This document shows, piece by piece, positions 791-43,560 of a DNA stretch of 64,000 nt (position 1 is its first letter; each line of letters opens with the position of its first letter). Position numbers and translations under genes: made by a program. A model generated the notes under the pieces. That model saw only the letters and a program-made list of their open reading frames with translations, had not been told where the DNA came from and did no database searches. The DNA is from Haplodiscus bocki (taxonomy: Eukaryota). The stretch is from the NCBI GenBank assembly GCA_965655095.1, contig OZ296653.1, positions 26,908,001-26,972,000 of the forward strand, read 5' to 3'.

Positions 791-1331
791 CTTTTGTGAT
801 ACTGCCAAAAAGAGCCACAGGAACGTCCGGTTTACGAGAAAAAAGACCACCAGTTGAGGCAACCAAATTTGGACAAGAAATAAGACTATTTCCCTCTCGT
901 ATACTGCGTTCTTATCAGATATAATGTTTATGTTTCCTAGTGAAAATGGATGCTCTATCTGTTTTGAATAAAAAGTTTTCTTCTTTCTTCTTTCTTCTAA
1001 AAAAATGCCAGGGCGAGATCCGCGCATCTTGACTGCAAATCATCAACAGCAACAAAAAGGTTTTTGCCAACCAGTGGTTTCTCAGATTATTTACAAGTTT
1101 TAGACTCCAGTTTGGGTACATCATTTGCTTTCATAGCCCTTACTGATCAAGTATTTTGCCAGAGCTGTTCCTCGCCTAATTAAGGAATTAGGTGTAACTT
1201 TGGTCACCGTTGGTTATTTTCGGAAAGTCCTAAGGGAAAGCTACGAAATGCATTGAGCTTTGACACCATTTTTTGTCCCTTTAGAGTTTGCATATTCTTA
1301 GCTTGTGAAAGGGTTGTTTTTTTCAGTAGTC

Positions 1332-2375
1332 ATGTCTGTAGTTTCGTATGTTTATGAATCATTATGGGAAGACCGTGAAGTCAAATTCGATCTTGGCAAA
1401 AACTTGTTGCGCCCTCGGGCAGGTGAATTTGTCATAGACCGACTAGAGGGCGTTGAGGATACGAAGGGCAACAATGGAGAAAAAGGTCGACTGATTGTCA
1501 CAAATCTCCGTCTAATCTGGCACGCCTTGGAGTACCCCAAAATTAATCTATCTATTGGCCTTGGTAACATTTTGAACCTTACTAAAAAGTTATCATCATC
1601 AAAACTTCGTGGTGGCGAAACCGAGTCTTTGTATATCTTGACAAAATATAACAACACCAAGTTTGAATTTATATTTACAAGCATAATTCCTGGAAATCCC
1701 AGACTCTATACTACTGTACATAGTGTACATAGAGCGTATGAAACGTCAAAGCTGTACCGTGAGCTGAAACTTAGAACTGCAGTTTTGGAGGGAAAGGAAT
1801 TGAATTTGCTTCCACTGGAAAAATTGTGCTCAAAGGTAGATGGAGCCTGGAACTTGTCAAACGACCAAGGAAACTTGGGAGTCATGTATATCACTAATGT
1901 TCGCGTCGTATGGCATGCGATGCCCAAAACTAACTTCAACGTTTCCATTCCCTGGGTACAAATAAAAACCATTAAGGTGAGAAACTCCAGATTTGGGCCT
2001 GCTTTGGTTATTGAGTCCTCCAAAATCAGCGGCGGGTACGTTTTGGGCTTCAAAATAGACCCGGAAGATAAATTAACGGATGTGCTGAAACAATTGCTGG
2101 CTTTTTATGAGACGTACTACAAGAAACCACAGCTTGGAGTCGAATATATTCTCGAAAATTCCAAGGCTGGAATTGGGGACGCAGCTAAAGCGTTAGAGAA
2201 TCTGGTGGATGATGTGGAAATAGAGACCGGAAATCAAGATACATTGGCTGCTTACTATAACGCAGGTGGAGATAGTGACAGTAAAAGAGAAATTGTGTAC
2301 TCCGATGTTCTGGGTCTGGCTATTGAAAAACCAAAAGAGGGTTTTACTATTCAGAGTTTGTGGGAACTCAACTGA
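1332..2375 (+). CDS. BBS5: Bardet-Biedl syndrome 5 protein (BBSome subunit, tandem PH-like domains), single coding exon, 347 aa
   Basis: Translation MSVVSYVYESLWEDREVKFD...VEDTKGNNGEKGRLIVTNLRLIWH...WNLSNDQGNLG...TNVRVVWHA...FNVSIP...SGGYVLGFKIDP...LGLAIEKPKEGFTIQSLWE follows the known BBS5 family along its whole length. ATG at 1332 aligns with the family N-terminus; the ORF-track start at 1305 is a GTG. Confidence 0.95.
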   Translation: MSVVSYVYESLWEDREVKFDLGKNLLRPRAGEFVIDRLEGVEDTKGNNGEKGRLIVTNLRLIWHALEYPKINLSIGLGNILNLTKKLSSSKLRGGETESLYILTKYNNTKFEFIFTSIIPGNPRLYTTVHSVHRAYETSKLYRELKLRTAVLEGKELNLLPLEKLCSKVDGAWNLSNDQGNLGVMYITNVRVVWHAMPKTNFNVSIPWVQIKTIKVRNSRFGPALVIESSKISGGYVLGFKIDPEDKLTDVLKQLLAFYETYYKKPQLGVEYILENSKAGIGDAAKALENLVDDVEIETGNQDTLAAYYNAGGDSDSKREIVYSDVLGLAIEKPKEGFTIQSLWELN

Positions 2376-2959: not shown

Positions 2960-4695
2960 GAACAATGTCAGTGAAATATTTTCAAGTGTACACTCATCAT
3001 CAGCATACAGTCTAAAAATAAAAAAAAATCAAGCTTGAAGTTATTCAAATCAGTCACTAGGAATTTCAGCATGAGGTGAAGTCTATGCTCACATAACCAG
3101 AGTGGTTTTCATTTGCACATGCGACTCCAGGCTTCACAATCGGATGGTGAGTGGGCGCTGTCGGTATTCGTCTCGAGAATTTAGTGCATGTTTTTCTTTC
3201 GCTATGAAGCCTCCAGGGTTAACAGTTTATTTTGGTTATTGCTCGCCGCAAGTACATCAGCCAGTCCAATCTTGATTTCCGAGACAGCCTTGAAGGTGTT
3301 CACCAATCGGCGCCGATGTCCTTGGGTGCTCAAAAAGTCTGGTTGTGAGATGTACCGTTTAGCCGACATAGCAGGAAATGCATCCCGAACAGACAATTTT
3401 GTAAACCCTACTTCTGAGTTCCTTCGGAACCGGGACCTTAAGAGATGGCAAGGCTGTCTTAAGTTTCCTTGTGAAGATTACTGAGCACGCAGCTGTTTTT
3501 CTGAGTTTGGCAGACAATTGATCAGATATTCGGCCTCGGTATGGAGTCACAAACAAATTTCGAGCTGGGCGCACTTCTCTTTGGTCTTGCAATGTGGTGT
3601 CTGGCTGTGGCGTAGCCTCTTTCGATAATATCTCGATCGTATTTCTGATAATAGGGGCGTAGAAGGTTGGAAGATAATGGTTGGCTTCAAGGTATGTGGT
3701 AAGCCTGTTTACAGCATTGCCAAAATTGGCTCAATTCGACTCAGTGTGGTGGATACGGTGGATTTCGCCTTCTACGTTTGGTTTACATTTGGTGGGGGCA
3801 CAAGCAAAATAGGACAGGTATACACCTGTGTCAGAGGGCTTCGTGTACCAGTATAAGCTCAACCTGTTTTGGCTGCGGGTAACCAGCAAGACCAGAAAAG
3901 CAAGTTCGCTGTGTGTTTCATGCTCAATTGTGAATTCAAGATTCAGATGGAGCGTGTTAGCTGTCTTGAACACGTTTTCAACCTCGTCGCGTCTTACCGA
4001 CCGTATAATGTTGTCCACATAACGTGCGAATATCTTCGCTGGAACAGAAAGGGGGTTCAACCATGTTCCAATGGGGTGTTGTTTGCGAGCATCTTCACGT
4101 CCATTCGCATTCTATTGATCTTCGAAGTTCCGAAATCGAGAGCCTGGTGCATCGGCGGTGAAACCAATCACCGCAAATGCAACATTGAACTGAATTACCT
4201 CCAACGTTTCCGCTGCATGCCCCGCATGGAAAAAACACATTTGCCACGATTGGGAAAGCTGTCCCGGGTCTGTCATTCTGCATGAAATTTCCTCTTCCTG
4301 CAATCACAGTTCCAAACTGTTTCATCCAAATGTTTGCCTGGTAAACAGCAAGTTTTGACCCCATCGGTAATCAATCTATTTGCGAGCTTTGCCCAATTCA
4401 GCCTTCAAGAGGCGTCTCTGGAAATTCTGCACAATGGGGGGCTCGAAACACCCGTTTTTTGGGATCCGGAATCTAAGAAAATTCGGGATCACATCGTTGA
4501 TCAAACACTCTTCCAAAAAAACAATGCACAGCTCAGTGATTTGAGTCGTCTGATTGCATTTTTGATACGCCGAGAAAAGATTCCACTTTTTGCATAGGAA
4601 CAATGTCTTTTTCAGAAATCGAAAGCGAAGAAACATTGACGGATAAATATCATCAGCAATGCAGTCTAAAAAAACACCAAAAATCAAGCATGCTA
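2960..4695 (-). mobile_element. Penelope-like retroelement remnant (RT + GIY-YIG endonuclease), internally deleted and frameshifted
   Basis: Minus-strand pieces in Penelope order: N-terminal FLEECLINDVIPNFLRF, motif PMGSKLAVYQANIWM, ARYVDNI (YVDD), thumb LEFTIEHE...LAFLVLLV...WYTKPSDTGVYL, and GIY-YIG VYKIVCSGCISCYVG. A related ~45-nt block (catcagca..cagtctaaaaa..aatcaagc) at ~2997-3035 and ~4651-4693 suggests pseudo-LTR repeats. Confidence 0.85.
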
Positions 4696-6990
4696 CCGGA
4701 ATTTTTTCAGCACAATTCCGGAAATTTTTCGCTCAAAGTCCGAAAACGATCAAGAATGAACAAAATTTTTACGAGTTAAAGTATGTGGAAGTCCTCCTCC
4801 GAACACATAGAACTGCTTTGACAACCCCGCTGACACCTAACCGCTCAAATTCCGGAAATATTTGTAGGTTCATGAATTTTGTTTCAAAAGTTTGTCCCCG
4901 ATCCTCTGGGTGCACAATATTCTTTTTCAACATTTCAATCAAAAGTTGTTTTACCCAAAGTCCCAAAAGACTTCGCTGAAAGCCCAACAAAAATTATGAG
5001 CTTGTCGTTTGTTCTCGATTGCATCCCAGAACTTTCTTCTTGACACGTAGAAAGCAATTGTGACCATCTTGCAGTAACATTGTTGTCAACCGGCTGAAGA
5101 TAACTGAAAATCGAAATTTTTCCAAGAAAATTTTCTTCTCATTGTTTCTGTGGAGAGGTTGAATGCAGTTTTGAAAACCCTTCCTAGAAATTTTAGCTTA
5201 ATGTTTGTAAACTTTCTGATCAGAAACGAATAGTTTTTGACTCAGAGTCCGAAAAAGAACAACAGTTCATTAGGATTTTCTGAGGAAATTCTTTCAAAAT
5301 TTTCTCCCGGACACTTAGACGGCGTTATTAACAAAAACAGCTGAAAAAAATTCTTCCATAGTACAAAAAACTATGAATTTTTGGAAAAAATAAACATTCG
5401 AAAAAGTTCTCCATGACTATTAGAACGCAGTTTTGACAACACCAATTCATAATTCTTTGCTCGAAGTCCCAAAAAGTATTGGTTCGCATTTCTTCGAGTT
5501 TTTTCTTAAAAATATTCCACTGGACATGTGGGAATCAATTTTCAGAACACTACCAAAAAACTTCCTTGCTCGAAGTGCGAAAAAATTTTGAGTATCAAAA
5601 ACTTCTGGGCTGAAAAGGTCCTTCTGTGTTCTTTGAAATTTTTGGTGAGAACCCCAGCGAAACAGCGGAATTTTCTTCTGCACAACGCCAGAATAAATTT
5701 CTAATTTTTCAGATTTTCTCCAAAAATTGTTTTATGAAAGTCAGTTTTGAGAATAACAGTCTTTGTCCAAAATCGAACTTTCTGAGCTAATATCGAGCCT
5801 CCTCGCACCCCAGGGTACCTATGTTTTTCCTGAAGTTCGCGGCAAGTACCTTTTTGGGCCATTTCTTATCAAACGTCGACAGAGATCATAGCAGCGCTGC
5901 TGCACCTCTTGTAAATGTCTATACTCGAGCGTACCGAAGGCTTCACTCAAATCTTTTTAAAGGCTTTATTTCATTTTATTCCGTCTGGAACTGCATTTTA
6001 TTTCTTTTAATATAGCCAATGCGTCAACAGTAGATTGTTTTTAACGAAAGTCGAATTTCTGGTCATAGAAAAACTAAATATTTCCCAGTATGGGTACAAC
6101 CTTTCATGCAGTACTTTCTCCAAGATTTCAATACACTCGAGCAAAAATACAAGTCAATGGTTGTTCTGATCGCTTGCAGGGCTTGCCTGATATAAGGGAA
6201 GAATTTTTATATCTTTCAAACGCTCGGGAAAACGCCAGTCACCAAGGAAAAATACATTATATTTTAAATGGGGTGTAAACCTCAGCCTCACTTTTCCGTA
6301 ACAGTACATTGCTTTTTTCATCGATCTCGCTCGAATGCTTATGTTTTTTGAATCATATAGTAATTTTAACGCATTTTTCGTGCAGAGTCTGAGGCAAACG
6401 TATATTGTGATTGGCATTTCTTACAGCAACTGCAGCAATATTAACTTTGTTCATCGGCTCTGATAGTTTCGAACCGAGTGACAAAGTGTTTATTGACATG
6501 AATTTTCTGTCCTTAGAATTGACGAAATTTTTCCCGTCGTGTCTGAGCTTGTCACTTCTTGTTCTTATCAATTTTTCCAATGAGTTTGCCTATTAACTTG
6601 AATACTGGCTTCGAACCCCCAATACATTTTTGAACTTTTCAAACAATTGGTTTTGTCGCAGGCTGCCGCCTGTGACGGCCAAGTCTACACGGTAAACTGT
6701 AACAACACACAGCCAGGTACATAAACCAAGTTTCTGCCTTTTTTGAAGATTTAAAAAATTCTAAAAACCAATTAACTGTAAGTACTGTACAAATTCCCCC
6801 ACTTTAGAGAATACACTACACCTACTTATATAAATTTACTCATGTTTATATATTTAGATACATATTTTATTACTGTGTAAAATCCATACTAAAAGCAAGA
6901 GCGCTAGCATCAATTGAGAAAACAATTTAAGCGAACATTTACAGTACTTAACTAATGCACAAATACTGTACTGGAACCTGATTGGTAAAA
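3631..6990 (+). repeat. Segmental duplication unit X, copy 1 (direct copy at ~42499-45858)
   Basis: tctcgatcgtatttctgataataggggcgtag at 3631 recurs at 42499. The ORF track repeats identically or nearly so (3731/42598, 3869/42736, 4659/43524, 4769/43634). Confidence 0.9.
5760..6653 (-). mobile_element. Decayed LINE reverse-transcriptase fragment (copies at ~7200-8090 + and ~44620-45519 -)
   Basis: Minus-strand translation across stops gives YDQKFDFR*KQSTVDALAIL...KDLSEAFGTLEY, a degenerate QFGFRxxxSTxDAL...DLSKAFDT non-LTR RT motif. Confidence 0.6.
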
Positions 6991-7010
6991 ACAGATTGGA
7001 GCCTGATTGG
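6654..7010 (+). mobile_element. Truncated LTR 5' fragment of Gypsy family B
   Basis: Begins TGTCGCAGGCTGCCGCCTGTGACGG, as do the LTRs at 39581 and 45520, and follows the 45520 LTR to ggaacctgattggtaaaaaca. Confidence 0.85.
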
Positions 7011-7014
7011 TAAG

Positions 7015-7199
7015 TAAGTTTGTATATGTAGGTATAACGTATTCTCTAAAATGGGGGAAACTTGTCCAGCACTTACATTCAATTGGATTTTAGAATTTTT
7101 TATCTTCAAACAAGGGCAATGAGTTGGTTTGTGTACCTAGCTGTGTGTTGCTATAGTTTACCGTGTAGACTTGGCCGTCACAGGCGGCAGCCTGCGACA
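7015..7199 (-). mobile_element. Inverted truncated LTR 5' fragment of Gypsy family B
   Basis: ccgtcacaggcggcagcctgcgaca (ending 7199) is the reverse complement of the LTR start, with the same flanking LINE sequence as 6654 and 45520. Confidence 0.85.
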
Positions 7200-10100
7200 A
7201 ACAATTTTTTGAAAGATTCAAAAATGTATTGGGGATTGATGCGAGTATTCAAGTTAATTCGCGAACTCGGTAGAAAAACCGATAAGAACAAGAATTGACA
7301 AGCCTAGATACTATTGGGGAAAATTCGTCAATTCTATGGACAGAAAATTCATGTCAATAAATACTTTGTCACTCGGTTCGAAACTATCAGAGCCGATGAA
7401 CAAAGTTATAATTGCTTCAGTTTCTGTAAGAAATGTCAATCACACTAGAGGTTTGCCTCAGACTCCGCACGAAAAATGCGTTAAAATTACTATATGTTTC
7501 AAAAATAAGCATTCGAGCGAGATCGATGAAAAAAGCAATGTACTGTTACGGAAATTGAGGCTGAGGTTTACACCCCATTTAAAATAAAATGTATTTTTCC
7601 TTGGTGACTGGCGTTTTGCCGAGCGTTTGAAAGCTATAAAAATTCTTCCCTTATATAAGGCAAGCCCTGCAAACGGTCAGAACAACCATTGACTTGTATT
7701 TTTGCTCCAGTGTATTGAAATCTTGGAAAAAATACTGCATGAAATGTTGTACCCATACTTGGAAATATTTAGTTTTTCTATGACCAGAAATTCGATTTTC
7801 GTTAAAAACAATCTACTGTTGACGCATTGGCTATATTAAAAAAATAAAATGCAGTTCCAGACGAAATAAAATGAAATAAAGCCTTTAAAAAGATTGGAGT
7901 GAAGCCTTCGGTACGCTCGAGTATAGACATTTACAAGAGGTGCAGCAGCGCTGCTATGATCTCTGTCGACGTTTGATAAGAAATGGCCCAAAAATGTACT
8001 TGCTGCGAACTTCAGGAAAAACATAGGTACCCTGGGGTGCGAGGAGGCTCGATATTAGCTCAGAAACTTCGATTTTGGACAAAGACTGTTATTCTCAAAA
8101 CTGACTTTCATAAAACAATTTTTGGAGAAAATCTGAAAAATTAGAAATTTATTCTGGCGTTGCGCAGAAGAAAATTCCGCTGTTTCGCTGGGGTTCTCAC
8201 CAAAAATTTCAAAGAACACAGAAGGACCTTTTCAGCCCAGAAGTTTTTGATACTCAAAATTTTTTCGCACTTCGGGCAAGGAAGTTTTTTGGTAGTGTTC
8301 TGAAAATTGATTCCTACATTTCCAGTGGAATATTTTTAGGAAAAAACTCGAAGAAATGCGAACCAATACTTTTTGGGACTTCGAGCAAAGAATTATGAAT
8401 TGGTGTTGTCAAAACTGCGTTCTAATAGTCATGGAGAACTTTTTCGAATGTTTATTTTTTCCAAAAATTCATAGTTTTTTGTACTATGGAAGAATTTTTT
8501 TCAGCTGTTTTTGTTAAAAATGCCGTCTAAGTGTCCGGGGGAAAAGTTTGAATGAATTTTCTCAAAAATTCCCGTTGAACTGTTGTTCTTTTTCGGACTC
8601 TGAGTCAAAAACTATTCGTTTCTGATCAGAAAGTTTACAAACATTAGGCTAAAATTTCTAGGAAGGGTTTTCAAAACTGCATTCAACCTCTCCACAGAAA
8701 CAATGAGAAGAAAATTTTCATGGAAAAGTTTCGATTTTCAGTTATCATGTAGCATGCTTGATTTTTGGTGTATTTTTAGACTGTATTGCTGACGATATTT
8801 ATCCGTCAATGTTCCTTCCCTTTCGACTTCTGAAAAGGACATTGCACCAATAGAAAACTTGTTGGGAACACAGAAAGAGAAGCAGATCGTTGGAAGCGTT
8901 CAAAAAATGACAAAAAAGTTCAAGTAAAAAATATAACAACAAAAACTGGGATCACAGAAACGAGTTGAAAATTTTGTTTTGATAATTGCAAAATCAGGTC
9001 GAGAAAACGTCGATATGTTGAGAACGAAGACAACTTAGGCGCTCGTGTTTCGCCTGGAAAAATGCGTTTTGATCAATTAATAGGGAAAATCCTCGAGACC
9101 TCGCTCTGAAAGTGGAAGACCAGAGGAGCCTCCAAATGCCTGGTGCATCCTGTGGACCGATAATGGGATTTGCGAAGAACACTGAGAAAACTAGGGAAAG
9201 AAATTTTTGGTTACCAGCTGCGTTATTGTTGTATTCAAAAACCCTTGTGCAGATAACCGAGATAAGGGAACGGATCCGAATGCTGATCCTTTCTTCAAAT
9301 TACGTATTCACAATTTCAATATTTGCAATTGAACATTTATCTTTGACAATGTAAACAAACTCTGACATTTCAATTTCATCCACTTCGCCACCTTATTGTT
9401 GGTAAGGTAGACTCGAGTTAGATTGTACCCTGATCATTACAATATCCGTTTTAATTGTATCAAGTAAATTTTGTCTAATCACCACTGCTTTTGAATTCGC
9501 TTTCATGTACCCTTTGTGATTGCGAATTTTACAGTCTAGTCTTCTTTCACTTCCCGTAGAACTCGAACTAATTTTTTGTGAAATTTTAATCAAAAGCTGC
9601 GATCTGATGAGTGAATTACCCACAGGAAGTGAAGACTTCGAAAGCTAACGGACTTACAAGTCATGGAAGTTCAGCATGTTGTTTGTAAGCCAAAAGTCGG
9701 AAGATCCGTCAAATTTCCTGTAACAAATGAGTCATGAGTTTTCGCTGCAACAACAGTATGGGATTGAGTACTGAGATCCTAGTGTAACTACACAGCAAGA
9801 TATCAGACTAAATGGCAAGTTTTACGTGATAACAAGCGGCGAAGAGCCAAATTGTCACCGCCGGTGTGGCTCAAAGGACTCTCATAGGACGGACTTGATT
9901 TTAATGTTTGAAACAAAAATGTTTTTTTTTTTTGGTTTTAAGAGTATGAAAACAGATTGTGATAGGATTCGAACACGCTGCTTACCGATTTGTTAGACCT
10001 AATTGGGGTTTTCGCAGATTGGAGCTTCTGATGGAAAAGGCTCAAAATTGCAGAAACTTTTTTCGTCCAAAGTCCGAATAGTTTTCTAAAATCTGGAACA

Positions 10101-16100: not shown

Positions 16101-18334
16101 ACCTGACATGCGTGGGAATTGACAATATCAATATCTACTTACAGGCTGTTTTTCCTCCTATGAGAAAAAATTTTTTCCATGATCTATATTCCCCTAACCA
16201 AATTCTCCTGGAAGGCGTTTTGTCAACCTGAACGATGGTTCCACAAACTTTTCTGTTGGAATACAAAACTTCCCAATTCATTCTTCCTCAGTGAGCTACG
16301 TGCTTTACTTCTGCGACTCCGGATCCTGATTTTGGATCTGCTTGTCACAGTTATCCCCTGGAATTTGCCAAATGTGCTTGATAACAAAGCCTGTCAACTA
16401 TCGTCGTTTTCACTTTTAGGAACTTTGTTTCTTGGATTACGGAAATTAAAGATGATACTCCTAATGTAAAAGCGATGGAGGCTTTCCGGTTGCGTCTTTT
16501 TTTGATGTTAATTATGTCCAATTTAGTGATTTCGGAATGAGAATTTGTTGAAATTCTCAAAAGTCTTGGAATTCTAAATGGTACAGGAACCCAAATTGGT
16601 ACAAAGAGCAACAATTGTATGGAATATGGGACAGTTGTTGTTGGCTCTAGCGTTTGTGCCACACTGCTTTTTTAATTTCAAGCCAGTTTCAACATTCCAC
16701 TCACGTTCATAATCAGACCAAAAACGAACATTGGTTTCCTAAAAGTTTCAGAGTCACTAAATAAGGATCAACTTTGTAAAAATACAGAAACGCTGCATTA
16801 ATTTTAAGCTGACGAGTATCAGAGATGATGATATCATGCTGTTTTCAAACCATTTTTTTGACTGCCTACTCGCTCTCAAAAAGGTGATTCTGTAGCGCCT
16901 AGTCTGGAACATAATGATTTAATCTCTCAATTTGTTCTGCGTGCGCGTAAAAAGAAGGTACTGGGTTGTTTTCTTATACTCAGAGTGGTAAAACAAAATT
17001 TCACGATCAAATCCGCCAATGCAAAATTTTTCGGACTCAATGTTTTCCAGGAAAGTGAATTGATCTTCAAATCACGACGACTTAGTTCAGCAGCTGGTAA
17101 AAGATGTCGCAACTAAATCGTCATATGGTTCATTCGCTGCACTGCTTAAAAGTTTTCATCGACCTTTGCCACCCAAGGAAATAGAGTACTTTTTGAAAGT
17201 TTTTTCAATGTTTTTCATTTTACAAATTTTTCTGTTACCTCTAAGCCTTCAATTGGCGCCCCATCAATCACAACAAAAACAACGCCGTCCTCTTTTACAA
17301 AAAAACTAATGTAATTTTTTACAAAAAATTTTGAAGCACCAGCGAGTGAAACAAGATTCTGCCTAGTACTTATAGGATTGCTATGTTTGATGCGCTGCAG
17401 GTCAGAGATTGGCAAAAACCGTCCCATACTATTTGTTAAAGGATCCTTTTGAGGCACTCGATAAAGCTTTCATCGCTTTTTGTCAACTGTAGAGTACTGT
17501 GCGTTTTTGAAAGTTTGAGAAGTTTTTTTTTACATTAAAAAGTAGCTTGTTTTTCCTCCAAACTGCAGTATCTTTTAAAGCAATGAGGTTTCCTAAGTTA
17601 GTATAGCAAAGAATGCAGCATTTTATCAATGCAAATCATTGTAGGTGGAATGAACTAACGTACCTAACAGTTATGTATCTGTGTGGTTTGATGTTCAAAG
17701 AATTGCCTTGAAGTGTGCAAATTCATAGTACAAGGTCTGTTTCCTACAATAGCAAGCTATCTACAAGTTTTAGAAATTACTAATAGGCTCACCAGGCCCT
17801 GCAATTGAAATGTTTTCAGTGGCTCGGGTAACATACTTAAAATTTGCTGACAAGAATCTGCCAGAACAGCAACTTTTTTAGTTTTCCGTCCCCCGGCATC
17901 ATGAACCTCATTTTGTGTAGTGATCTTTTAATAGCACATTTCTTCGGACAACGCTCTTTTCCAAAAGAAGCTGACAAAAACTGATTTTTTCCAGAAAATT
18001 GTTCTTTTGAGCTCGAGGTGACGAAGAAATAATTCATCGCCAATAGGTTTATTAAGCTTGCCCAATTGCAAATTGTTGGTTTGAGTTAAGATGTGTAAAC
18101 TATCTTCCTAGATGCGGATTGTTGGGAGAACAAATTTTTCGGAAAATTTTACGCTTTTGAGCATTGTGAAACTAAAGTTAAGTTCTATTCAAAAACATTT
18201 TTTGGACTTCTACAACAAATGTTGAGTTTAGAGATGTAACATCAGTTTTTTTATGCGGACGCAAATTTTGTCCTGAAAAAATCTTTTTGTGTCGGGCAAA
18301 AGAAGCTTATCTGTTTACAAAGGTGGTTCCAATT

Positions 18335-21300
18335 TATGGGCATCAGATGTTCAGTTGAGTCAGGAGAGGTCAAAACTTCTTCTTTGAACTGAATTCAAGA
18401 AAGATCGACTTTGTAAGAAATAATTCTGTGTTTGGCTGTGCCCGATGGACTTCTACTTGTTTTCGTGTAGGATCTTTTGGCTCCTCCAGACCCTTTGTCA
18501 AAACGCTAGTTGATGAGGGGTGAAAATATCTTTTCGATGTGTTTTTGCGGGGGAACATTTTCTTCAGTAGGTAGTTTTTTTCAGCATTGCTGGAAAAACG
18601 TCTTTTTTTGTTTTCAAAAGTTGTTTCTGAGAAAGCGCAAACTTTGGCAGCATGTGCTCAGTGGAGTTCAGATGAGTAAAAATGTCTTTTCAAAGCTAAT
18701 TTTGGAAAAAAAAGCTGCAACACACTCTTTTGTTCTCCGCAATGCCCACCGTAATTTTAACTGTTTTCAATTAACAAATTTAGGTTGCCCAAAAAAGTAA
18801 TTTTGATTGTTAGTTAAGTTTAGGGTGTAAAAAGATAGTCCTTTCAGACTTTGCGAAAGGGAGACAATTAAAGCAATTTTTTCGTTCAAAACAGTGGGCA
18901 ACAAACGCTTGGTTTCATATTTGGTTTTCGGACTCCCTCAAATCATTTTAGGCAGATGTCAAGTCAAAGGCGGAATGGTAAAACTTTGGGGTGTGGTTTT
19001 GAATAAGGAACGACTTTGCAGAAGAAATATTTGCTTTTAGCATTGCTCGAACGTCTACTTGTTTTCATGTTTGAAATTGGGACTCAATCACGTTTGCAGT
19101 CAAAAATTGAATTCATGGACTATATTGTATCGATTTCCATGTAGCTTTTTGAAAGAACAACATTTCCAAAGAAAACTATCCTCTCAGAATGCCTGATCAT
19201 TTTCGGAATTACTCAATGAAGGTTTAATTGTCATCAAATGTGTTTCAAAGGACGCCGAACTTTGTTCGTTTACGGTTAGCTGATCTCCGAGTTGTGAAAG
19301 AAACTTTCCGGTTCATTTTTGCGATCAAATGACGCTTTAAGAGAGAATTTTTCTTTTCAGTGAAGCCCAGTGAACGGTGATTTGTTTTCAAAGATGCTTT
19401 TGGTGTCGCCAAAACTTTCAGGTCAAGTTTTAGGTGGAATGAGGAAAATTCAAACGTCAATTTCAAAGGAACGACATATTCAGAAAGTGTAGTTTTCTTT
19501 ACATCCTAGGAAAATGAACCATCACTTATTTTTGAATCTGGTACCTGGTCGTGCTAATATTGTTCGTTACATGTTGAGTGATTTCGGAGATTTAAAACTT
19601 CTCTCGATGCGAAAGATCACCTGTTTCAGAAATTACTTTCGTTTGCCGTTCTTGCAACCAATGCTTGATTGTTTTTAAAGGCCCTTTTAGGCTCGTCTAA
19701 ACTTGTTAATTGAACGCTCAGTCAAGTTGAGAAGTGATAAACACCTTCTTGATACGAGTTCGTGGAAGAACGGAATTTTCAGAAACACTTTTGGTTTTCG
19801 GCGATATGAGACATATTCGATTGTTTTCAAATAAGGTTTTTTGGGCTCGGCCCCACGTTGGTTTTGTCTGTTTAGAGTCTAGGCATTAGAAGTACTTTCT
19901 TTATAGACCCAAGGCCTCGCAGAAAGAGCAATTTTTGCGGATTAGCATATTTGACTTTTTTTTGTCCATTTATACCCTTTGTTTTCCTATACTACTGTGT
20001 CCAGATGAACTTTTTGAGGAAAACTTTTTTTCATAAAAGGTATCAGTTTTCAAACAGTTTTGGACATTGAGCGAAAGTTGTTTGAGTTTTCTACAGAAAA
20101 CACTTCGAAAAATTTGTCAAAAATGCATTCTACGTGTCTGGAGGAACGTATTGGAAAACAACTGAGAACAAACTATGTGTTCAAGATTTTAGAAAACTAT
20201 TCGCACTTAGGACGAGAAAAGTTTCTGCAATTTTGAACCTTCTCCGTCAAAAACACCTATCTGTGAAAACCCCAAATAAATCTAACAAATCGCTAAGCAG
20301 CGTGTTCAAATCCTATCACAATCTATTTCCGTATACCTAAAACCAGAAAAAAAAACATTTTTATTTCAAACATTAAAATCAAGTCCGTCCTATGAGAGTC
20401 CTTTGAGCCACACCGGCGGTGACAATTTGGCTCTTCGCCGCTTGTTATCACGTGCAACGTGCCATTCAGTCTGATATGTTGCTGTGTAGTTACACTAGTA
20501 TCTCAGTACTCATACCCATACTGTTGATGCAGCGAAAACTCATGACTCATTTGTTTCAGGAAATTTGACGGATCTTCCGACTTTTGGCTTACAAACAACA
20601 TGCTGATTGGCCATGACTTGTACGCCCATTGGCTTTTGAAGTCTTTATGGGTATCAGATGTTCAGTTGAGTCAGGAAAAATCAAACCTTCTTTCTTGAAC
20701 TGAATTCAAGAAAGAGCGATTTTTTAAAAATTACTTCTGTGTTTGGTTTAGCTCGATGAACATTTACTTGTTTTCGTGTATGGTTTTGGTCTCCTCCACA
20801 CCTTTTGTCAGAACGTTAGTTGATAAGGAGTTAAAATATTTTTTCGTTGTGTTTTTGCGATGGAACGTTTTCTTCAGTTGGTAGTTATTTTCAGCCTTGC
20901 TTTAAAAACGTTTCCTTGTTTTCGAAAGTTGTTTCTGAGAAAGCGCAATCTTTGACAGCAAGTGCTTAGTCGAGTTCAGACGAGTAAAAATGTGTTTTCA
21001 AAGCTAATTTTGGAAAAAAAGCTCCAACACATTCTTTTGTTATCCGCAAAGCCCACCGTACTTTCAACTGTTTTCAATTAACAATTTTAGGTTGCCCCTA
21101 AAACGGTTATTGATTGTTAGTTAGGTTTGGGGTGTAAAAGGATCGACCACTCAGACTTTGTGAACGGAAGACAGTTTAGGCAATTTTTTTTCGTTCAAAA
21201 CAGTGGCCAACAAACGATTGCTTTCATGTTTGGTTTTCGGACGCCCTCAAATCATTTTAAGCAGATGTCAAGTCAAATGCGGAATGGTAAAACTTTTTGG

Positions 21301-24300
21301 GTGTAGTTTTGCATAAGTAACGATTTTGCAGAAAGTAAATTTGCCTTTAGAATTACCCGAACGTCTTTTTGTTTTCATGTTTGAAATTGGGACTCAATCA
21401 CATTTACAGTCAAAAATTGAATTCAAGGAATATATTGCATCGTGTTCTATGTAGCTTTTCGAAAGAACAACATTTCCCAATAAAACTTCTTTTCAGAATG
21501 CAACATTTTTTTCGGAATTACTCAAGGATGGTTTACTTGTCATCAAATGTGTTTTAATGATCGCCGAACTCTGTTCATTCACGGTTAGCTGATCTTCCAG
21601 TTGTGAAAGCAATTTTCCGGTTTGACTTTGCGAACAAATGACGTTTTAAGAGAGTATTTTTATCTTCAGTGATGCCCAGTGAACGGTGATTTGTTTTCAA
21701 ATGTGCTTTTAGTGTCGCCAATTCTTTTAGGTCCAGTTTTAGGTGGAAGAAGGAAAATTGAAACGTCAATTGCAAAGGAACTAGATATTCAGAACGTGTA
21801 GTTTTCTGTACATCCCAGCAAAAGGAACCATCAGTTATTTTTGAATATGGTACCTGGTCGTGCCCAAATTGTTCAATACATGTTGAGTGGTTTTGGAGAT
21901 ACAAAACTTCTCTCCATGCGAATGATCAACGGTTTCAGAAATTACTTTGGTTTTCCGTTCTTGCAACCAATGCTTGATTGTTTTTAAAGGCCCTGTTGGG
22001 CTCGCTCGAACATGTACATTGAATGGTCAGTCAACTTGAGAGGTGATAAACAACTTTTTGATGCGAGTTTGCGGAAGAACGTATTTTTCAGAAAACACTT
22101 TTGGTTTTCGGCGATATGATACATGTTCGATTGTTTTCAAATATGGTTTTTGGAGTCGGCCCCACGTTGGTTTTGTCTGTTTAGAGTTTAGGCATTGGAA
22201 CTACTTTCTTTATAGACCCAAGACCTCGCAGAAAGAGCAAATTTTGCAGATTAGTTTTGCATTTTTGACTTTTTCTCTCCTTTTATGCCCATTGTCCTTC
22301 CTATAATACTACGGTGTCCGCATGAACTTTTTGAGGAATAACTTTTTTTGATAAAAATTATCTTCTTCGAAATGTTTTAGAAATTGAGCGAAAAGTTTTG
22401 GTACTTTTTACAAAAATCATTTCGACAGGGTTGTCAAAACAGCATTCTACGTGTCCGGACGAACGTATTGGACAACAAGTGAGAACAAACTATGTGTTCA
22501 AAATTTTAGAAATTTATTCGGACTTTGGACGAAAAAATTTTCTGCAATTTTGAGCCTTTTCCATCAGAAGCTCCTATCTGCGAAAATCCTTTTTAGGTCT
22601 AACAAATTGGTAAGCATCGTGTTCGAATCCTATCACAATCTGTTTTCGTACACTTAAAACCAAAAAGAAAACATTTTTGTTTCAAACATTAAAATTAAGT
22701 CCGTCCTATGAGAGTCCTTTGAGCCACACCGGCGGTGACAATTTGGCTGTTCGCCGCTTGTTATCACGTATAACCTGCCATTTAGTGTGATATCTTGCTT
22801 TGTAGTTACACTAGGATCTCAGTACTTAATCCCATACTGTTGATGCAGCGAAAACTCATGACTCATTTGTTTCAGGAAATTTGACGGATCTTCCGACTTT
22901 TGGCTTACAAACAACATGCTGAAGAAAGAGCAATTTATTAAAAGTTCTTTGTTTGGATCAACTCGATGAACCTTTACTTGTTTTCGTGTATGGCTTTGGT
23001 CTCCTCCAGACCTTTTGTCAATACGTTAGTTGATAAGGAGTGAAAATATATTTTTCGATGTGTTTTTGCGAAGGAACATTTTCCTAAGTCGGTAATTTTG
23101 TTATTTTCATCAGCATTGCCTGGAAAACGTTTTCTTGTTTTGGAAAGTTGATTCCGAGAAAGCGCAAACTTTGACAGCATGTGCTCGGTTGAGTTCGTAC
23201 GAGTGAAAATATCTTTTGAAAGCTGATTTTGGAAAAAAACTTTAACACACTATTTTGTTCCCCGCAATGCCCACCGTACTTTTAACTGTTTTCAATCAAC
23301 TTTTTTAGGTTGCCCGTAAAATGGTTATTGATTGTTAGTTAAGTTTGGAGTGTAAAAGGATCGTCCCTTCAGACTTATTGAACGGAAGACAATTTAAGCT
23401 TTTTTTTCGTTCAAAATCGTGGGCAACCTTTTAAGCAGATGTCAAGTCAAATGAGGAATGGTAAAATTTTTTTGGTGTAATTTTGCATAAGGAACGACTT
23501 TGCAGAAAATACTTTTGCTTTTAGCATTGCTCCAACGTCTACTTGTTTTCATGTTAGAAATTGGAACTCAATCACCTTTGCAGTCAAAGATTGAATTCAT
23601 TGAATATATTGAATGGTGTTCTATGTAGCTTTCCGAAAGAACCACATTTCCGAAAAAAACTATCCTCTCAGAACGCATTATCATTTTCGGGAATTACTCA
23701 ACGAAAGTTTAATTGTCATCAAATGTGTTTTACAGATCGCCCAATTTTGTTCATTTACGGTCAGCTGATCTCCGAGTTGAAAAAGCAACTTTCCGGTTCG
23801 ATTTTGCTAGCAAATGACGTTTTAAGAGAGTATATTTTTTTCAGTGATGCCCAGTGAACGGTGATTTGTTTTCAAATGTGCTTTTGGTGTCGCAAAACGT
23901 TCAAGTCAAGTTTTAGGTGCAATGAGGAAAATTCATACGTCAATTGCAAGGGAACCAGATATTCAGAACGTGTAGTTTTCTTTACATCCATCACTTTTTT
24001 TTGAATATGGTACATGGTCGTGCTCATATTGTTCACTACATGTTGAGTGATTTCGGAGTTACAAAACTTTCTCGATGCGAATGATCACCGGTTTCAAAAA
24101 CTTTTTTGGTTTTCCGTTCTTGCAACCAGTGCTTGATTGTTTTTAAAGGCCCTGTTTGGCTCGCCCGAACCTGTTGAGTGAATGCTCAGTCAATTTGAGA
24201 GGTGATAAACACCTTTTTGATGAGAGTTTGCGGAGGAACGGAATTATCAGAAACACTTTTGGTTTTCAACGATATGAGACATGTTCTATTGTTTTCAAAT

Positions 24301-25098
24301 CTGGTTTTTGGGCTCGGCCCCACGTTGGTTTTGTTTGTTGAGAGTTAAACATTGGAACTACTTTTTTATGGACCCAAGGCCTCGCACAGAGAGAGCAAAT
24401 TTTGCAGATTAGTTTTGCACATTTGACCTTTTCTGTCCACTTATGCCCTTTGTCTTTCCTATAATACAAGGTGTCCGGATGAACTTTTTGAGGAATACCT
24501 TTTTTGATAAAAATAATCTTTTTCCGATTATTTTTGGACATCGAGCGAAAAAAGTTTGGACTTTCTACGAAAATAATTTCGGCAGGGTTGTCAAAACTGG
24601 ATTCTACCTGTCCGGAGGAACGTATTGGAAAACAACTGAGAACAAACTATGTGTTCAAGATTTTAGAAAACTAATCGCACTTAGGACGAGAAAAGTTTAT
24701 GCAATTTTGAACCTTCTCCGTCAAAAACTCCTATCTGTGAAAACCCCAATTAAATCTAACAAATCGGTAAGCAGCGTGTTCAAATCCTATCACAATCTAT
24801 TTTCGTATACTTAAACCAGAAAAAAAACATTTTTGTTTCAAACATTAAAATCAAGTCCGTCCTATGAGAGTCCTTTGAGCCACACCGGCGGTGACAATTT
24901 GGCTCTTCGCCGCTTGTTATCACGTACAACGTGCCATTTAGTCTGATATGTTGCTGTGTAGTTACACTAGGATCTCAGTACTCAATCCCATACTGTTGAT
25001 GCAGCGAAAACTCATGACTCATTTGTTTCAAGAAAATTGACGGAGCTTCCGACTTTTGGCTTACAAACAACATGCTGAACGTCCATGACTTGTACGTC
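18335..25098 (+). repeat. Three diverged tandem copies of a ~2.2-2.3-kb unit (~18335-20643, ~20644-22921, ~22922-25098)
   Basis: The block aagtccgtcctatgagagtcctttgagccacaccggcggtgacaatttgg...aaacaacatgctga recurs at ~20381, ~22697 and ~24853. A single inverted copy lies at ~9650-12345. Confidence 0.88.
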
Positions 25099-41541: not shown

Positions 41542-41552
41542 ACGTCCATTAG
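40944..41552 (+). pseudogene. Gag N-terminal ~199 codons carried by the 3' LTR, running into flanking DNA and stopping after NVH
   Basis: Near-identical to Gag residues 1-199; diverges exactly at the LTR end. Confidence 0.85.
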
Positions 41553-42498: not shown

Positions 42499-43560
42499 CT
42501 CGATCGTATTTCTGATAATAGGGGCGTAGAAGGTTGGAAGATAATGGTTGGCTTCAAGGTATGTGGTAAGCCTGTTTACAGCATTGCCAAAATTGGCTCA
42601 ATTCGACTCAGTGTGGTGGATACGGTGGATTTCGCCTTCTACGTTTGGTTTACATTTGGTGGGGGCACAAGCAAAATAGGACAGGTATACACCTGTGTCA
42701 GAGGGCTTCGTGTACCAGTATAAGCTCAACCTGTTTTGGCTGCGGGTAACCAGCAAGACCAGAAAAGCAAGTTCGCTGTGTGTTTCATGCTCAATTGTGA
42801 ATTCAAGATTCAGATGGAGCGTGTTAGCTGTCTTGAACACGTTTTCAACCTCGTCGCGTCTTACCGACCGTATAATGTTGTCCACATAACGTGCGAATAT
42901 CTTCGCTGGAACAGAAAGGGGGTTCAACCATGTTCCAATGGGGTGTTGTTTGCGAGCATCTTCACGTCCATTCGCATTCTATTGATCTTCGAAGTTCCGA
43001 AATCGAGAGCCTGGTGCATCGGCGGTGAAACCAATCACCGCAAATGCAACATTGAACTGAATTACCTCCAACGTTTCCGCTGCATGCCCCGCATGGAAAA
43101 AGCACATTTGCCACGATTGGGAAAGCTGTCCCGGGTCTGTCATTCTGCATGAAATTTCCTCTTCCTGCAATCACAGTTCCAAACTGTTTCATCCAAATGT
43201 TTGCCTGGTAAACAGCAAGTTTTGACCCCATCGGCAATCAATCTATTTGCGAGCTTTGCCCAATTCAGCCTTCAAGAGGCGTCTCTGGAAATTCTGCACA
43301 ATGGGGGGCTCGAAACACCCGTTTTTTGGGATCCGGAATCTAAGAAAATTCGGGATCACATCGTTGATCAAACACTCTTCCAAAAAAAATGCACAGCTCA
43401 GTGTTTTGTGTCGTCTGATTGCATTTTTGATACGCCGAGAAAAGATTCCACTTTTTGCATAGGAACAATGTCTTTTTCAGAAATCGAAAGCGAAGAAACA
43501 TTGACGGATAAATATCATCAGCAATGCAGTCTAAAAAAACACCAAAAATCAAGCATGCTA
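42499..43560 (-). mobile_element. Second copy of the Penelope-like RT remnant with PHD finger (lacks the GIY-YIG part)
   Basis: Same ORFs as 3731-4687 (PMGSKLAV, CGAC..WFHRRC, RYVDN). Confidence 0.85.

What the first reader, a model, noticed from the sequence alone, without database searches (positions are those of the whole stretch)
4020..4364. PHD finger inserted within the reverse transcriptase of a Penelope-like element
Seen: RT motif (P)MGSKLAVYQANIWMKQF reads in frame into CGAC...VQCCICGDWFHRRC...EWT(*)RC, a C4HC3 PHD pattern with a damaged last pair. About 20 codons later comes the catalytic ARYVD motif. The same arrangement is at 42890-43237. Established: these two RT motifs are normally about 15-20 residues apart. 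PHD fingers are known in ORF1 of some LINEs, and I do not know them as a standard feature inside Penelope RT. Inference: a Penelope lineage with a chromatin-reader module grafted into the RT palm, possibly directing insertion.
Basis: partly seen in the sequence, partly recalled or inferred. Interest (0 to 1): 0.72.

Follow-up and report, generated by a model that had tools for sequence, protein, structure and literature searches.

The report
PHD finger inside Penelope reverse transcriptase
A dead copy of a Penelope-type jumping gene still shows a small zinc-finger "chromatin reader" module spliced into the middle of its DNA-copying enzyme, and better-preserved relatives show that a whole lineage of these elements keeps the module under selection, probably as a docking device.

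Summary
On the minus strand, RT motif 4(B) (4314-4367) runs in frame into a C4HC3 PHD pattern (4089-4226). RT motif 5(C) follows at 4001-4039.

This copy is a wreck:
- about 368 codons (N-terminal motifs and RT1-3) are deleted;
- a stop sits at the seventh zinc-ligand column;
- one frameshift and five further stops follow.

The "second copy" at 42.9-43.2 kb is a 95-99% duplicate with the same deletion, so it is not independent evidence.

About 34 related protein clusters, and open frames of up to 775 codons in this genome, carry the finger at the same site.
- They are compatible with one clade, sister to PHD-less elements.
- All eight ligands are invariant across 13 fingers that are 35-43% identical.
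- dN/dS of the finger is about 0.055, against 0.29-0.57 for its linkers.
- The fold and profile are closest to Pygopus-type H3K4me-reader PHDs.

Chromatin docking is inferred, not shown. Net charge and pocket-lip residues vary widely between sub-lineages.

PHD inserts were known only in algal Chlamys PLEs, at other sites, so I class this as a new variant of a known kind. The scan noted the same arrangement before on other DNA of this genome (s1-364293 and several first-reader notes).

The parts
3134..4636 (-). Remnant single ORF of a Penelope-like element, copy 1. It is dead: one large internal deletion, one frameshift and six in-frame stops.
   Evidence: tblastn of full-length relatives P0008, P0010 and P0012 maps reference aa 1-84 to 4636-4385, aa 453-539 to 4382-4065 and aa 550-847 to 4039-3137.
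4385..4636 (-). N-terminal region of the ORF. The start Met is at 4634-4636 and the conserved 'IPNFLRFRIPKNGCFE' block is at 4442-4489.
   Evidence: 46% identity to residues 1-84 of P0008 and P0010.
4382..4385 (-). Deletion junction. About 368 reference residues are missing (DKG motif, RT1, RT2, RT2a, RT3(A)).
   Evidence: In one search, aa 84 is followed directly by aa 453. Undeleted sibling copies carry about 1.08 kb here (C9:48891351 to 48892438, C9:44784522 to 44785606, C1:84289295 to 84290378).
4314..4367 (-). RT motif 4(B), PMGSKLAVYQANIWMKQF.
   Evidence: It aligns with G-x-AMG...LAN.WM of all relatives.
4227..4313 (-). Linker 1 between the motif-B helix and the finger.
   Evidence: Across 34 relatives this segment is 11-35 aa long with 15% mean pairwise identity. 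In the AF2 model of a relative it has low confidence (pLDDT about 51).
4089..4226 (-). PHD-type zinc finger (C4HC3), first to last ligand column. A TGA at 4095-4097 occupies the seventh ligand column.
   Evidence: Pfam PHD E=1e-4. The eight ligands are invariant in alignment A1. Nearest solved structures are Pygopus PHDs.
4040..4088 (-). Linker 2. It holds a net 1-nt frameshift between about 4040 and 4065.
   Evidence: The frame changes between the HSPs ending at 4065 and starting at 4039-4060. Among relatives the linker is 4-31 aa with 9% identity.
4001..4039 (-). RT motif 5(C), AKIFARYVDNIIR (catalytic YVDD degraded to YVDN).
3659..4000 (-). RT motifs 6(D) and 7(E) and the start of the thumb (HLNLEFTIE, YWYTKPSDTG, ...YLPTFY), with a stop at 3731-3733.
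   Evidence: 49-51% identity to P0007, P0009 and P0012.
3224..3406 (-). GIY-YIG endonuclease with the CCHH motif (VYKIVCSGC..YVG, ..EH..H). It is broken by four stops.
   Evidence: Relatives hit Pfam GIY-YIG weakly: 17.6-17.9 bits, below the 22.6-bit cut-off.
42502..43386 (-). Copy 2 of the same deleted element (finger at 42956-43093, motif B at 43181-43234, motif C at 42868-42906). It is cut off at 42497 by another repeat.
   Evidence: 95-99% DNA identity over 3630-6996 versus 42497-45862, including non-PLE flank and the same deletion.

Best explanation
**What it is (shown).** The window holds two duplicated, dead, internally deleted copies of a canonical Penelope-like element with a C-terminal GIY-YIG endonuclease. 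By its endonuclease and linker motifs it is of the Penelope/Poseidon type.

Its lineage carries a 46-51-residue PHD zinc finger inserted in the loop between the motif 4(B) helix and the motif 5(C) beta-hairpin of the RT palm. The finger hangs on two short linkers that are variable in length and poorly conserved. It is a lineage feature kept by purifying selection, probably gained once.

**How it works (inferred).**
- The finger folds as an independent cross-braced two-zinc module on the outside of the palm.
- It most likely serves as a docking module that tethers the RT-endonuclease ribonucleoprotein to chromatin during target-primed reverse transcription.
- The favoured ligand is the N-terminal tail of histone H3.
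- The methyl-K4 preference is uncertain and probably differs between sub-lineages.

In the window copies themselves the module is non-functional debris.
For: **The insert is a lineage feature.**
- It is present at the same site in all 8 sibling copies covering this region.
- It is present in other PLE families of this genome, one of them with open frames of 525-775 codons.
- It is present in about 34 protein clusters from other assemblies and metagenomes, while 50 relatives have the short 32-38-aa spacing.

**One origin is compatible with the data.**
- On a tree built without the insert columns the PHD-bearers form one clade: support 94/86, and 99% of bootstrap trees need only one change.
- With 96 rows, the tree that holds them together is 37.6 lnL better than the tree found by the free quick search (p-AU 0.91).

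**It is a genuine PHD.**
- 7 Cys and 1 His, plus V14, W29, W51 and G54, are invariant in 13 fingers that are only 35-43% identical.
- 13 of 13 hit PF00628, and an intact finger of this genome scores 31.7 bits against a 24-bit cut-off.
- A profile search of the PDB puts Pygopus PHD on top at E=8e-10.
- The AF2 model (pLDDT 82) matches Pygo, Alfin-like, BPTF, MLL1 and TAF3 reader PHDs at TM 0.62-0.78.

**It is a module on tethers.**
- Mean pairwise identity is 0.38 for the finger at near-constant length. It is 0.15 and 0.09 for the linkers, which vary in length.
- In the full model the RT core has pLDDT above 90, the finger 75-79 and the linkers 51-64.

**It is under selection.** dN/dS of the finger is 0.057 and 0.054 in two independent pairs. 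The linkers give 0.57 and 0.285, and the RT core gives 0.064.

**The histone groove is largely kept.** Counts are for the equivalents of human Pygo1 residues in 28 fingers. The roles of these residues are taken from PMC2726290.
- W366: W in 28 of 28.
- V350: V in 25 of 28.
- A356: a small residue in 28 of 28.
- I357: I or V in 22 of 28.
Against: **No binding evidence of any kind was obtained.**

**The pocket differs from Pygopus.**
- The lip Asp (D352 equivalent) is kept in 4 of 28 fingers.
- E360 is acidic in 10 of 28.
- The second cage wall (Y341 equivalent) is aromatic in 8 of 28.

**Net charge is not what a histone-tail binder usually shows.** It runs from -8 to +10 with a median of +2, against -5 for human Pygo1. 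The families of this genome are basic: +5 for L010, and +4 to +6 for relatives of the window's family. That suits nucleic-acid binding at least as well as binding a basic histone tail.

**The last ligand pair is an unusual C-x-C in 21 of 28 fingers.**

**Other gaps.**
- The orientation of the finger relative to the RT cleft is not known, because no inter-domain confidence was available.
- Clade assignment rests on motifs, not on a tree with reference PLEs.
- Hammerhead ribozymes, typical of canonical PLEs, were not detected.
Confidence: 0.55

Rival explanations
1. The finger is a nucleic-acid-binding or purely structural zinc module. It would hold the template RNA, the primer or target DNA, or stabilise the palm, and would have nothing to do with histones.
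For: - Most fingers are net basic, up to +10, including those of this genome.
- The Pygopus lip residues D352 and E360 are mostly lost.
- The finger sits next to the catalytic hairpin.
- A Cys-free insert at the same loop in P0080 shows the site tolerates other additions.
Against: - The best-conserved non-ligand positions are those that floor and divide the H3 K4 and A1 pockets in Pygo1.
- The closest solved folds are all histone-tail readers.
- Several sub-lineages are strongly acidic, -4 to -8.
- Flexible, variable linkers do not fit a rigid structural brace.
Confidence: 0.25
2. The finger is an adaptor for a host protein. An example would be a BCL9/Legless-like partner bound on the rear face, as in Pygopus. 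It would recruit the element to a host complex rather than reading histones directly.
For: Pygopus PHDs are the nearest relatives by profile and by fold. Precomputed Pfam labels many of these proteins PHD_Pygo.
Against: - My hand mapping suggests the Pygo residues that contact HD1 (T375, A378, L382) are not clearly kept.
- Loop 2 is two residues shorter, and the C3-C4 spacing differs.
- The clade's fingers vary greatly on their surface.
Confidence: 0.08
3. One reading: a chance Cys-rich stretch, or a secondary insertion peculiar to this dead copy.
For: The window finger alone scores just under the Pfam cut-off (22.7 against 24 bits). The two window copies are duplicates of one event.
Against: The same insert, at the same site and with invariant ligands, is in sibling copies, in other families of this genome and in about 34 clusters elsewhere. 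It is under purifying selection.
Confidence: 0.02

Closest known systems
Chlamys Penelope-like elements of Chlamydomonas with PHD insertions (Craig et al. 2021, PMC8557442)
   Same: A PLE protein that carries a PHD finger as an in-frame insertion inside a catalytic domain. The authors likewise propose a chromatin-related role.
   Different: - Those are N-terminal-EN elements of green algae that lack the CCHH motif. Their finger lies between RT2a and RT3(A), or between the H and E residues of the endonuclease. Five families are reported.
- Here the element is a canonical C-terminal-EN element with CCHH, in an animal genome of 1.5 Gb. The finger lies between RT4(B) and RT5(C), in a clade of at least 34 protein clusters.
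Pygopus PHD finger (an H3K4me2/3 reader that also binds BCL9/Legless HD1; PDB 2vpe, 2vpg, 3zpv, 2dx8)
   Same: - Best profile match (E=8e-10) and best fold match (TM 0.72-0.78, 32-38% identity).
- The same 12-residue loop 1 in most fingers.
- The equivalents of W366, V350, A356 and I357 are conserved.
   Different: - There is no Pygo NHD and no Pygo gene context.
- The invariant Asp of the EVND motif is kept in only 4 of 28 fingers.
- The C3-C4 spacing is x2 rather than x3, and loop 2 is two residues shorter.
- The last pair is mostly C-x-C.
- Charge ranges from -8 to +10.

It works like, and may descend from, this kind of finger. It is not a Pygopus family member.
PHD domains in ORF1 of CR1 and L2 LINEs (Kapitonov and Jurka 2003; Metcalfe and Casane 2014, PMC4120745)
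   Same: A PHD finger used as a shuffled accessory module of a target-primed retrotransposon. It is proposed, without functional tests, to help target the host genome.
   Different: In those elements the finger is in the separate ORF1 protein or at an ORF terminus, and ORF2 is described as highly constrained. Here it is embedded inside the polymerase fold itself.
Chromodomain-bearing integrases of chromoviruses (Ty3/gypsy). This comparison rests on my own knowledge and was not checked here.
   Same: A retroelement enzyme fused to a histone-mark reader that biases integration.
   Different: A different reader fold and a different enzyme. This one's has not.

Membership tests
Penelope-like elements, canonical C-terminal EN+ (Penelope/Poseidon type) | RT with PLE motifs and a telomerase-like fold | tested here: met
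   - Motifs 3(A)-7(E) and the thumb align across 100 relatives.
- The Pfam RVT_1 hit is weak.
- The AF2 model of the 568-aa open frame has pLDDT 83, and its top Foldseek hit is TERT 6usr.
Penelope-like elements, canonical C-terminal EN+ (Penelope/Poseidon type) | N-terminal conserved region with the DKG motif | tested here: met
   'VPFDKGMGF' is present in the 775-codon frame L022:397-2721 and in P0005, P0008 and P0010. It is absent from the window copy only because of the deletion.
Penelope-like elements, canonical C-terminal EN+ (Penelope/Poseidon type) | C-terminal GIY-YIG endonuclease with the CCHH motif (two Cys between GIY and YIG) | tested here: met
   - 'VYQITCPGCQSSYVGQT..EH..H' is in relatives and 'VYKIVCSGCISCYVG' is in the window.
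- Pfam GIY-YIG scores 17.6-17.9 bits, below the cut-off.
- The definition is from PMC8557442.
Penelope-like elements, canonical C-terminal EN+ (Penelope/Poseidon type) | No CX2-5CxxC zinc-finger-like linker upstream of GIY-YIG (this separates Penelope/Poseidon from Neptune and Nematis) | tested here: met
   No CxxC lies between the thumb and GIY in L010, L022 or P0001-P0014, by inspection.
Penelope-like elements, canonical C-terminal EN+ (Penelope/Poseidon type) | Hammerhead ribozyme motifs in the pseudo-LTRs | tested here: inconclusive
   There is no Rfam hammerhead hit in the window or in 8 related loci, at gathering or at E<=1. PLE hammerheads are minimal and the flanks searched were short.
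Penelope-like elements, canonical C-terminal EN+ (Penelope/Poseidon type) | Placement inside the named clade on a tree with reference (Repbase) PLEs | not tested
PHD finger (PF00628) | C4HC3 ligand set with cross-brace spacing | tested here: met
   The pattern is C-x2-C-x10-15-C-x2-C-x4-H-x2-C-x15-19-C-x1-2-C/H. All eight ligands are invariant in A1. The last pair is C-x-C in 21 of 28 fingers and C-x2-C or C-x2-H in 7.
PHD finger (PF00628) | Score above the curated Pfam cut-off | tested here: met
   The L010 finger scores 31.7 bits against 24, and 13 of 13 members hit. The truncated window finger scores 22.7 bits, just under the cut-off.
PHD finger (PF00628) | PHD fold | tested here: met
   The AF2 model has pLDDT 82. 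Foldseek matches Pygo, AL3, BPTF, MLL1 and TAF3 PHDs at TM 0.62-0.78 and rmsd 1.3-2.5 Å.
PHD finger (PF00628) | Binds two zinc ions | not testable with these tools
   This needs metal analysis of recombinant protein.
Pygopus PHD subfamily | EVND motif with invariant V and D (Pygo loop) | tested here: not met
   V is kept in 25 of 28 fingers, but D in only 4 of 28. The definition is in PMC2726290.
Pygopus PHD subfamily | BCL9/Legless HD1-contact residues (T375, A378, L382) and the long loop 2 | tested here: inconclusive
   By hand mapping, S or T sits at the T375 position in most fingers and the A378 position is mostly E. Loop 2 is mostly 17 residues, which I counted by hand as two fewer than in Pygo1. 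The register is uncertain.
H3K4me-reading PHD fingers (functional class) | Aromatic or semi-aromatic cage and H3 A1/T3 groove | tested here: inconclusive
   - The divider Trp is invariant.
- The floor positions (V, a small residue, I/V) are conserved.
- The second wall is aromatic in only 8 of 28 fingers. An extra loop Tyr or Phe is present in 14 of 28.
- The lip Asp is mostly lost.
- No binding data exist.

The most novel reading that the evidence does not exclude
A deep lineage of animal Penelope-like elements uses a reader finger built into the polymerase palm to dock its RT-endonuclease on H3-tail-marked nucleosomes, and so chooses where target-primed reverse transcription starts.

The same type of finger is also built into a different RT loop (between motifs 6(D) and 7(E)) of an APE-type LINE in the same genome. 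If both are functional, RT-embedded chromatin readers would be a recurrent, convergent solution among target-primed retroelements of marine invertebrates. The acidic and basic sub-types might read different ligands.
Probability: 0.3. Interest if true: 0.8.

Novelty: new variant of a known kind. Interest (0 to 1): 0.55.

Why it matters
- **RT engineering.** Reverse transcriptases of target-primed elements are regarded as structurally constrained, and accessory domains normally sit at termini or in a separate ORF1. A folded reader domain tolerated and selected inside the B-C loop of the palm shows a permissive site for engineering such enzymes. A PLE enzyme has recently been made active in vitro (PMC11167929), and R2 retrotransposons are being explored for gene therapy (PMC13188248).
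- **Target choice.** It gives a concrete, testable hypothesis for how some Penelope-like elements pick integration sites. Almost nothing is known about this.
- **Annotation.** Gene predictions in invertebrate genomes that carry 'Pygopus-type PHD' labels may be these elements.

Tried and rejected
- **Complex prediction.** I ran the L010 finger, two Zn and residues 2-36 of this genome's own histone H3 (L055:1486-1896:-). The verdict was 'no answer' with score 0.01. This is not evidence either way.
- **Hammerhead ribozymes.** None were found in the window or in 8 related loci.
- **ESM Atlas look-alikes.** The B-PHD-C segment gave no usable hit.
- **Host Pygopus gene as a possible donor.** I searched with the human Pygo1 stretch printed. 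There was one weak hit (E=6e-4). It is a 174-aa ORF with a canonical acidic PHD and no other Pfam domain, not an obvious Pygopus gene. The origin of the finger stays open.
- **RNA evidence of activity.** No holder run is on record as RNA.
- **Larger quick tree.** The 96-row tree first placed the PHD-less clade inside a PHD-bearing grade, needing 4 changes. Two of those came from fragments that do not cover the insert. The AU test showed the one-clade tree is in fact better, so I do not claim a secondary loss.
- **Organism names for the relatives.** All are unnamed ENA assemblies. One contig is from the marine metagenome project PRJEB4352. Runs sharing words with the L022 family include coral and coral-reef metagenomes.
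Full report
**What is in the window.**

The feature lies on the minus strand. Full-length relatives were mapped onto the window by tblastn. That shows a single degraded ORF of a Penelope-like element (PLE) running from 4636 down to 3134.
- Reference residues 1-84 map to 4636-4385. They include the start Met and the conserved 'IPNFLRFRIPKNGCFE' block.
- They are followed directly by residue 453 at 4382. About 368 residues are therefore deleted: the DKG region and RT motifs 1 to 3(A).
- Next come RT motif 4(B) (4314-4367), an 87-nt linker, and the Cys/His pattern C-x2-C-x10-C-x2-C-x4-H-x2-C (4149-4226).
- The frame continues to a TGA at 4095-4097 and a final Cys at 4089-4091.
- A net 1-nt frameshift lies between 4040 and 4065.
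- Then follow RT motif 5(C), AKIFARYVDNIIR (4001-4039); motifs 6 and 7 and the thumb; and a GIY-YIG endonuclease with the CCHH signature (3224-3406).
- The ORF ends at 3134-3136, with five further in-frame stops on the way.

**The second site is not independent.**

The block 3630-6996 is 95-99% identical to 42497-45862. The identity covers more than 2 kb of sequence upstream of the ORF that other copies of the family do not share. It also covers the same 368-residue deletion. The two copies descend from one insertion that was later duplicated. Copy 2 is cut off at 42497 by another repeat.

**Is the finger a quirk of this corpse?**

No. A DNA search of the genome (G000, 1.5 Gb) finds sibling copies about 82% identical.
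- Four of them have about 1.08 kb where the window has its deletion.
- All eight siblings that cover this region carry the insert.
- In them the C-terminal part reads W-x-C-x-C, followed by about 16 residues and then the motif-C block.
- The window's stop therefore sits at the column of the seventh ligand.

A protein search with the window's 89-aa piece finds about 25 further loci that match across both motif B and the finger at 32-45% identity.
- One such family has copies 90-94% alike, with open frames of 525, 568 and 775 codons.
- These frames contain DKG, RT1-7, the finger, the thumb and GIY-YIG.
- None of the frames seen is complete to the N-terminus.
- The 775-codon frame has changes at one ligand column and at the conserved Trp before the last ligand pair.

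**Beyond this genome.**

Two word-index searches returned 101 protein clusters.
- In 50 of them the distance from G-x-AMG to RYxDD is 32-38 residues.
- In 28 it is 94-125 residues, with the Cys-rich insert.
- Six more fragments also show the finger.
- One PHD-less protein (P0080) has a Cys-free 25-residue expansion at the same loop, so the site is permissive.
- All PHD-bearers come from unnamed ENA assemblies or metagenomes. One contig is from a marine metagenome project.
- Runs that share words with this genome's family include coral and coral-reef metagenomes.
- The host is probably a reef invertebrate, but it was not named to me.

**Evolution.**

I built a careful tree without the insert columns. 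On it the 17 PHD-bearers form one clade (94/86; 99% of bootstrap trees need one change). They are sister to a well-supported PHD-less clade.

A quick tree of 96 rows instead drew the PHD-less clade inside a PHD grade. The AU test showed that the tree holding all PHD-bearers together is 37.6 log-likelihood units better (p-AU 0.91). One gain is therefore compatible with the data, and I do not claim a loss.

**The finger is conserved.**
- Across 13 fingers that are 35-43% identical, the seven Cys and one His, plus a Val, two Trp and a Gly, are invariant.
- Among 34 members the finger keeps a length of 46-51 residues and 38% mean pairwise identity.
- The two linkers vary from 11-35 and 4-31 residues, at 15% and 9% identity.

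**The finger is under selection.** I computed Nei-Gojobori dN/dS on two independent pairs with DNA in hand.

| Pair | Finger | Linkers | RT core |
|---|---|---|---|
| P0012 vs P0013 | 0.057 | 0.57 | 0.064 |
| P0001 vs P0002 | 0.054 | 0.285 | not computable (dS saturated) |

Synonymous divergence in the finger and the RT core is close to saturation, so the ratios are rough. The contrast is clear all the same: the finger is as constrained as the catalytic core, and its tethers are not.

**What kind of finger.**
- All 13 tested fingers hit Pfam PHD. The intact one from this genome scores 31.7 bits against a cut-off of 24.
- The truncated window finger scores 22.7 bits.
- A profile of the 13 hits Pygopus PHD structures first (E=8e-10), then Alfin-like, EBS, MLL and BPTF.
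- Precomputed Pfam labels on the database proteins read PHD_Pygo.
- An AF2 model of the finger (pLDDT 82) superposes on Pygo PHDs at TM 0.72-0.78 and rmsd 1.3-2.0 Å. It superposes on other H3K4me2/3 readers at TM 0.62-0.70.
- In an AF2 model of the 568-codon frame (pLDDT 83) the RT core is confident, above 90. The finger scores 75-79 and the two linkers 51-64.
- That is what a separately folded module on flexible tethers would give. It sits between the motif-B helix (residues 165-182) and the motif-C hairpin (268-280).
- The best solved match of the whole model is telomerase RT. That fits the known PLE-TERT kinship (PMC8557442).

**Function: inference only.**

Using the Pygo1-H3K4me2 structure paper (PMC2726290), I mapped its key residues onto 28 fingers.

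| Pygo1 residue | Role | In the 28 fingers |
|---|---|---|
| W366 | pocket divider | W in 28 |
| V350 | pocket floor | V in 25 |
| A356 | pocket floor | small residue in 28 |
| I357 | T3 contact | I or V in 22 |
| Y341 | second cage wall | aromatic in 8 |
| D352 | pocket lip | Asp in 4 |
| E360 | contacts A1 and R2 | acidic in 10 |

Net charge runs from -8 to +10, against -5 for Pygo1. The acidic, Pygo-like sub-lineages are P0037, P0039, P0040, P0014 and P0007. The fingers of this genome are basic.

My reading is that the H3-tail groove is largely kept. The methyl-lysine preference is unsettled and may differ between sub-lineages. Nucleic-acid binding is a serious rival for the basic types. 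I put about 0.55 on chromatin docking, 0.25 on a nucleic-acid or structural role, and less than 0.1 on a host-protein adaptor.

**Comparison with what is known.**
- By its motifs the element is a canonical C-terminal-EN PLE of the Penelope/Poseidon kind: DKG, GIY-YIG with CCHH, and no CX2-5CxxC linker (criteria).
- Placement on a reference tree was not possible. No hammerhead ribozyme was found.
- In the searchable literature, PHD fingers inside PLE proteins are reported only for five Chlamys families of Chlamydomonas. There they lie between RT2a and RT3(A), or inside the endonuclease.
- Further searches for Penelope with PHD or Pygopus found nothing else.
- PHD fingers are common shuffled modules of CR1 and L2 ORF1, and ORF2 is described as constrained.
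- The library lacks most subscription journals and Repbase Reports, so prior description elsewhere cannot be excluded.
- I class this as a new variant of a known kind.

**Related observation.**

An APE-type LINE of the same genome has 1027- and 984-codon open frames (L068:3600-6683:-, L069:1770-4724:+).
- It carries a similar C4HC3 finger between RT motifs 6(D) and 7(E).
- That finger is 45% identical to the window's finger over 40 residues.
- It matches the PLE finger profile at 95.7% probability.
- PHD-only matches lie in long open frames at several other loci.

This hints that this type of finger moves between retroelements and has been built into RT loops more than once.

**Earlier notes of the scan.**

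The same arrangement was noted on other pieces of this genome. One follow-up (s1-364293) reached the same reading. I repeated the tests independently on different DNA.

Noticed in passing
L068:3600-6683 (-) and L069:1770-4724 (+), that is G000:C2:50622500-50631500 and G000:C3:1505000-1513000: An APE-type LINE has open frames of 1027 and 984 codons (Pfam Exo_endo_phos plus RVT_1). It carries a PHD-like C4HC3 finger inserted between RT motif 6(D) ('KKTKVL') and motif 7(E) ('FTYLG'). The finger is 45% identical to the window's over 40 residues. One search lists PHD-only matches in long open frames (484-1029 codons) at several more loci.
   Followed up: partly
L067:1261-1785 (-), G000:C5: A 174-aa ORF has a canonical, acidic, Pygopus-like PHD finger (C-x2-C last pair, Pfam PHD 30.5 bits) and no other Pfam domain. 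It may be an ORF1-type protein of another retroelement and a candidate donor type for the RT-embedded fingers.
   Followed up: partly
window 1305-2375 (+): A complete, uninterrupted 356-codon ORF for a Bardet-Biedl syndrome 5 protein (Pfam BBL5 E=1e-131). It lies about 760 bp from the 3' end of the PLE remnant. An intronless BBS5 in an animal genome is unusual and may be a retrogene.
   Followed up: partly
window 5099-8746, 8701-9653, 41544-42496 and 17592-25101: A foldback lies next to the PLE: 5099-6840 is an inverted copy of 7013-8746 at 94% identity. 8701-9653 recurs inverted at 41544-42496 at 99.7%. A tandem array of units of about 2.2 kb (82-92% alike) spans roughly 17.6-25.1 kb.
   Followed up: no
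P0080 (843 aa, PHD-less clade): A Cys-free, proline-rich expansion of about 25 residues sits in the same loop between RT4(B) and RT5(C). This loop is therefore a permissive insertion site in PLE RTs.
   Followed up: partly
P0041, P0043-P0045, P0047, P0008 compared with the rest of the PHD-bearing proteins: The last zinc-ligand pair differs between sub-lineages. It is C-x-C in 21 of the 28 fingers parsed and C-x2-C or C-x2-H in 7. Net charge of the finger, computed on all 35 PHD-bearing rows, ranges from -8 to +10. The ligand bound may have diverged.
   Followed up: partly
G000:C4:15.58-16.31 Mb and G000:C37: There is a very large tandem array of histone genes with a period of about 4.6 kb. At least 150 intact 136-codon H3 ORFs were scored.
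   Followed up: no
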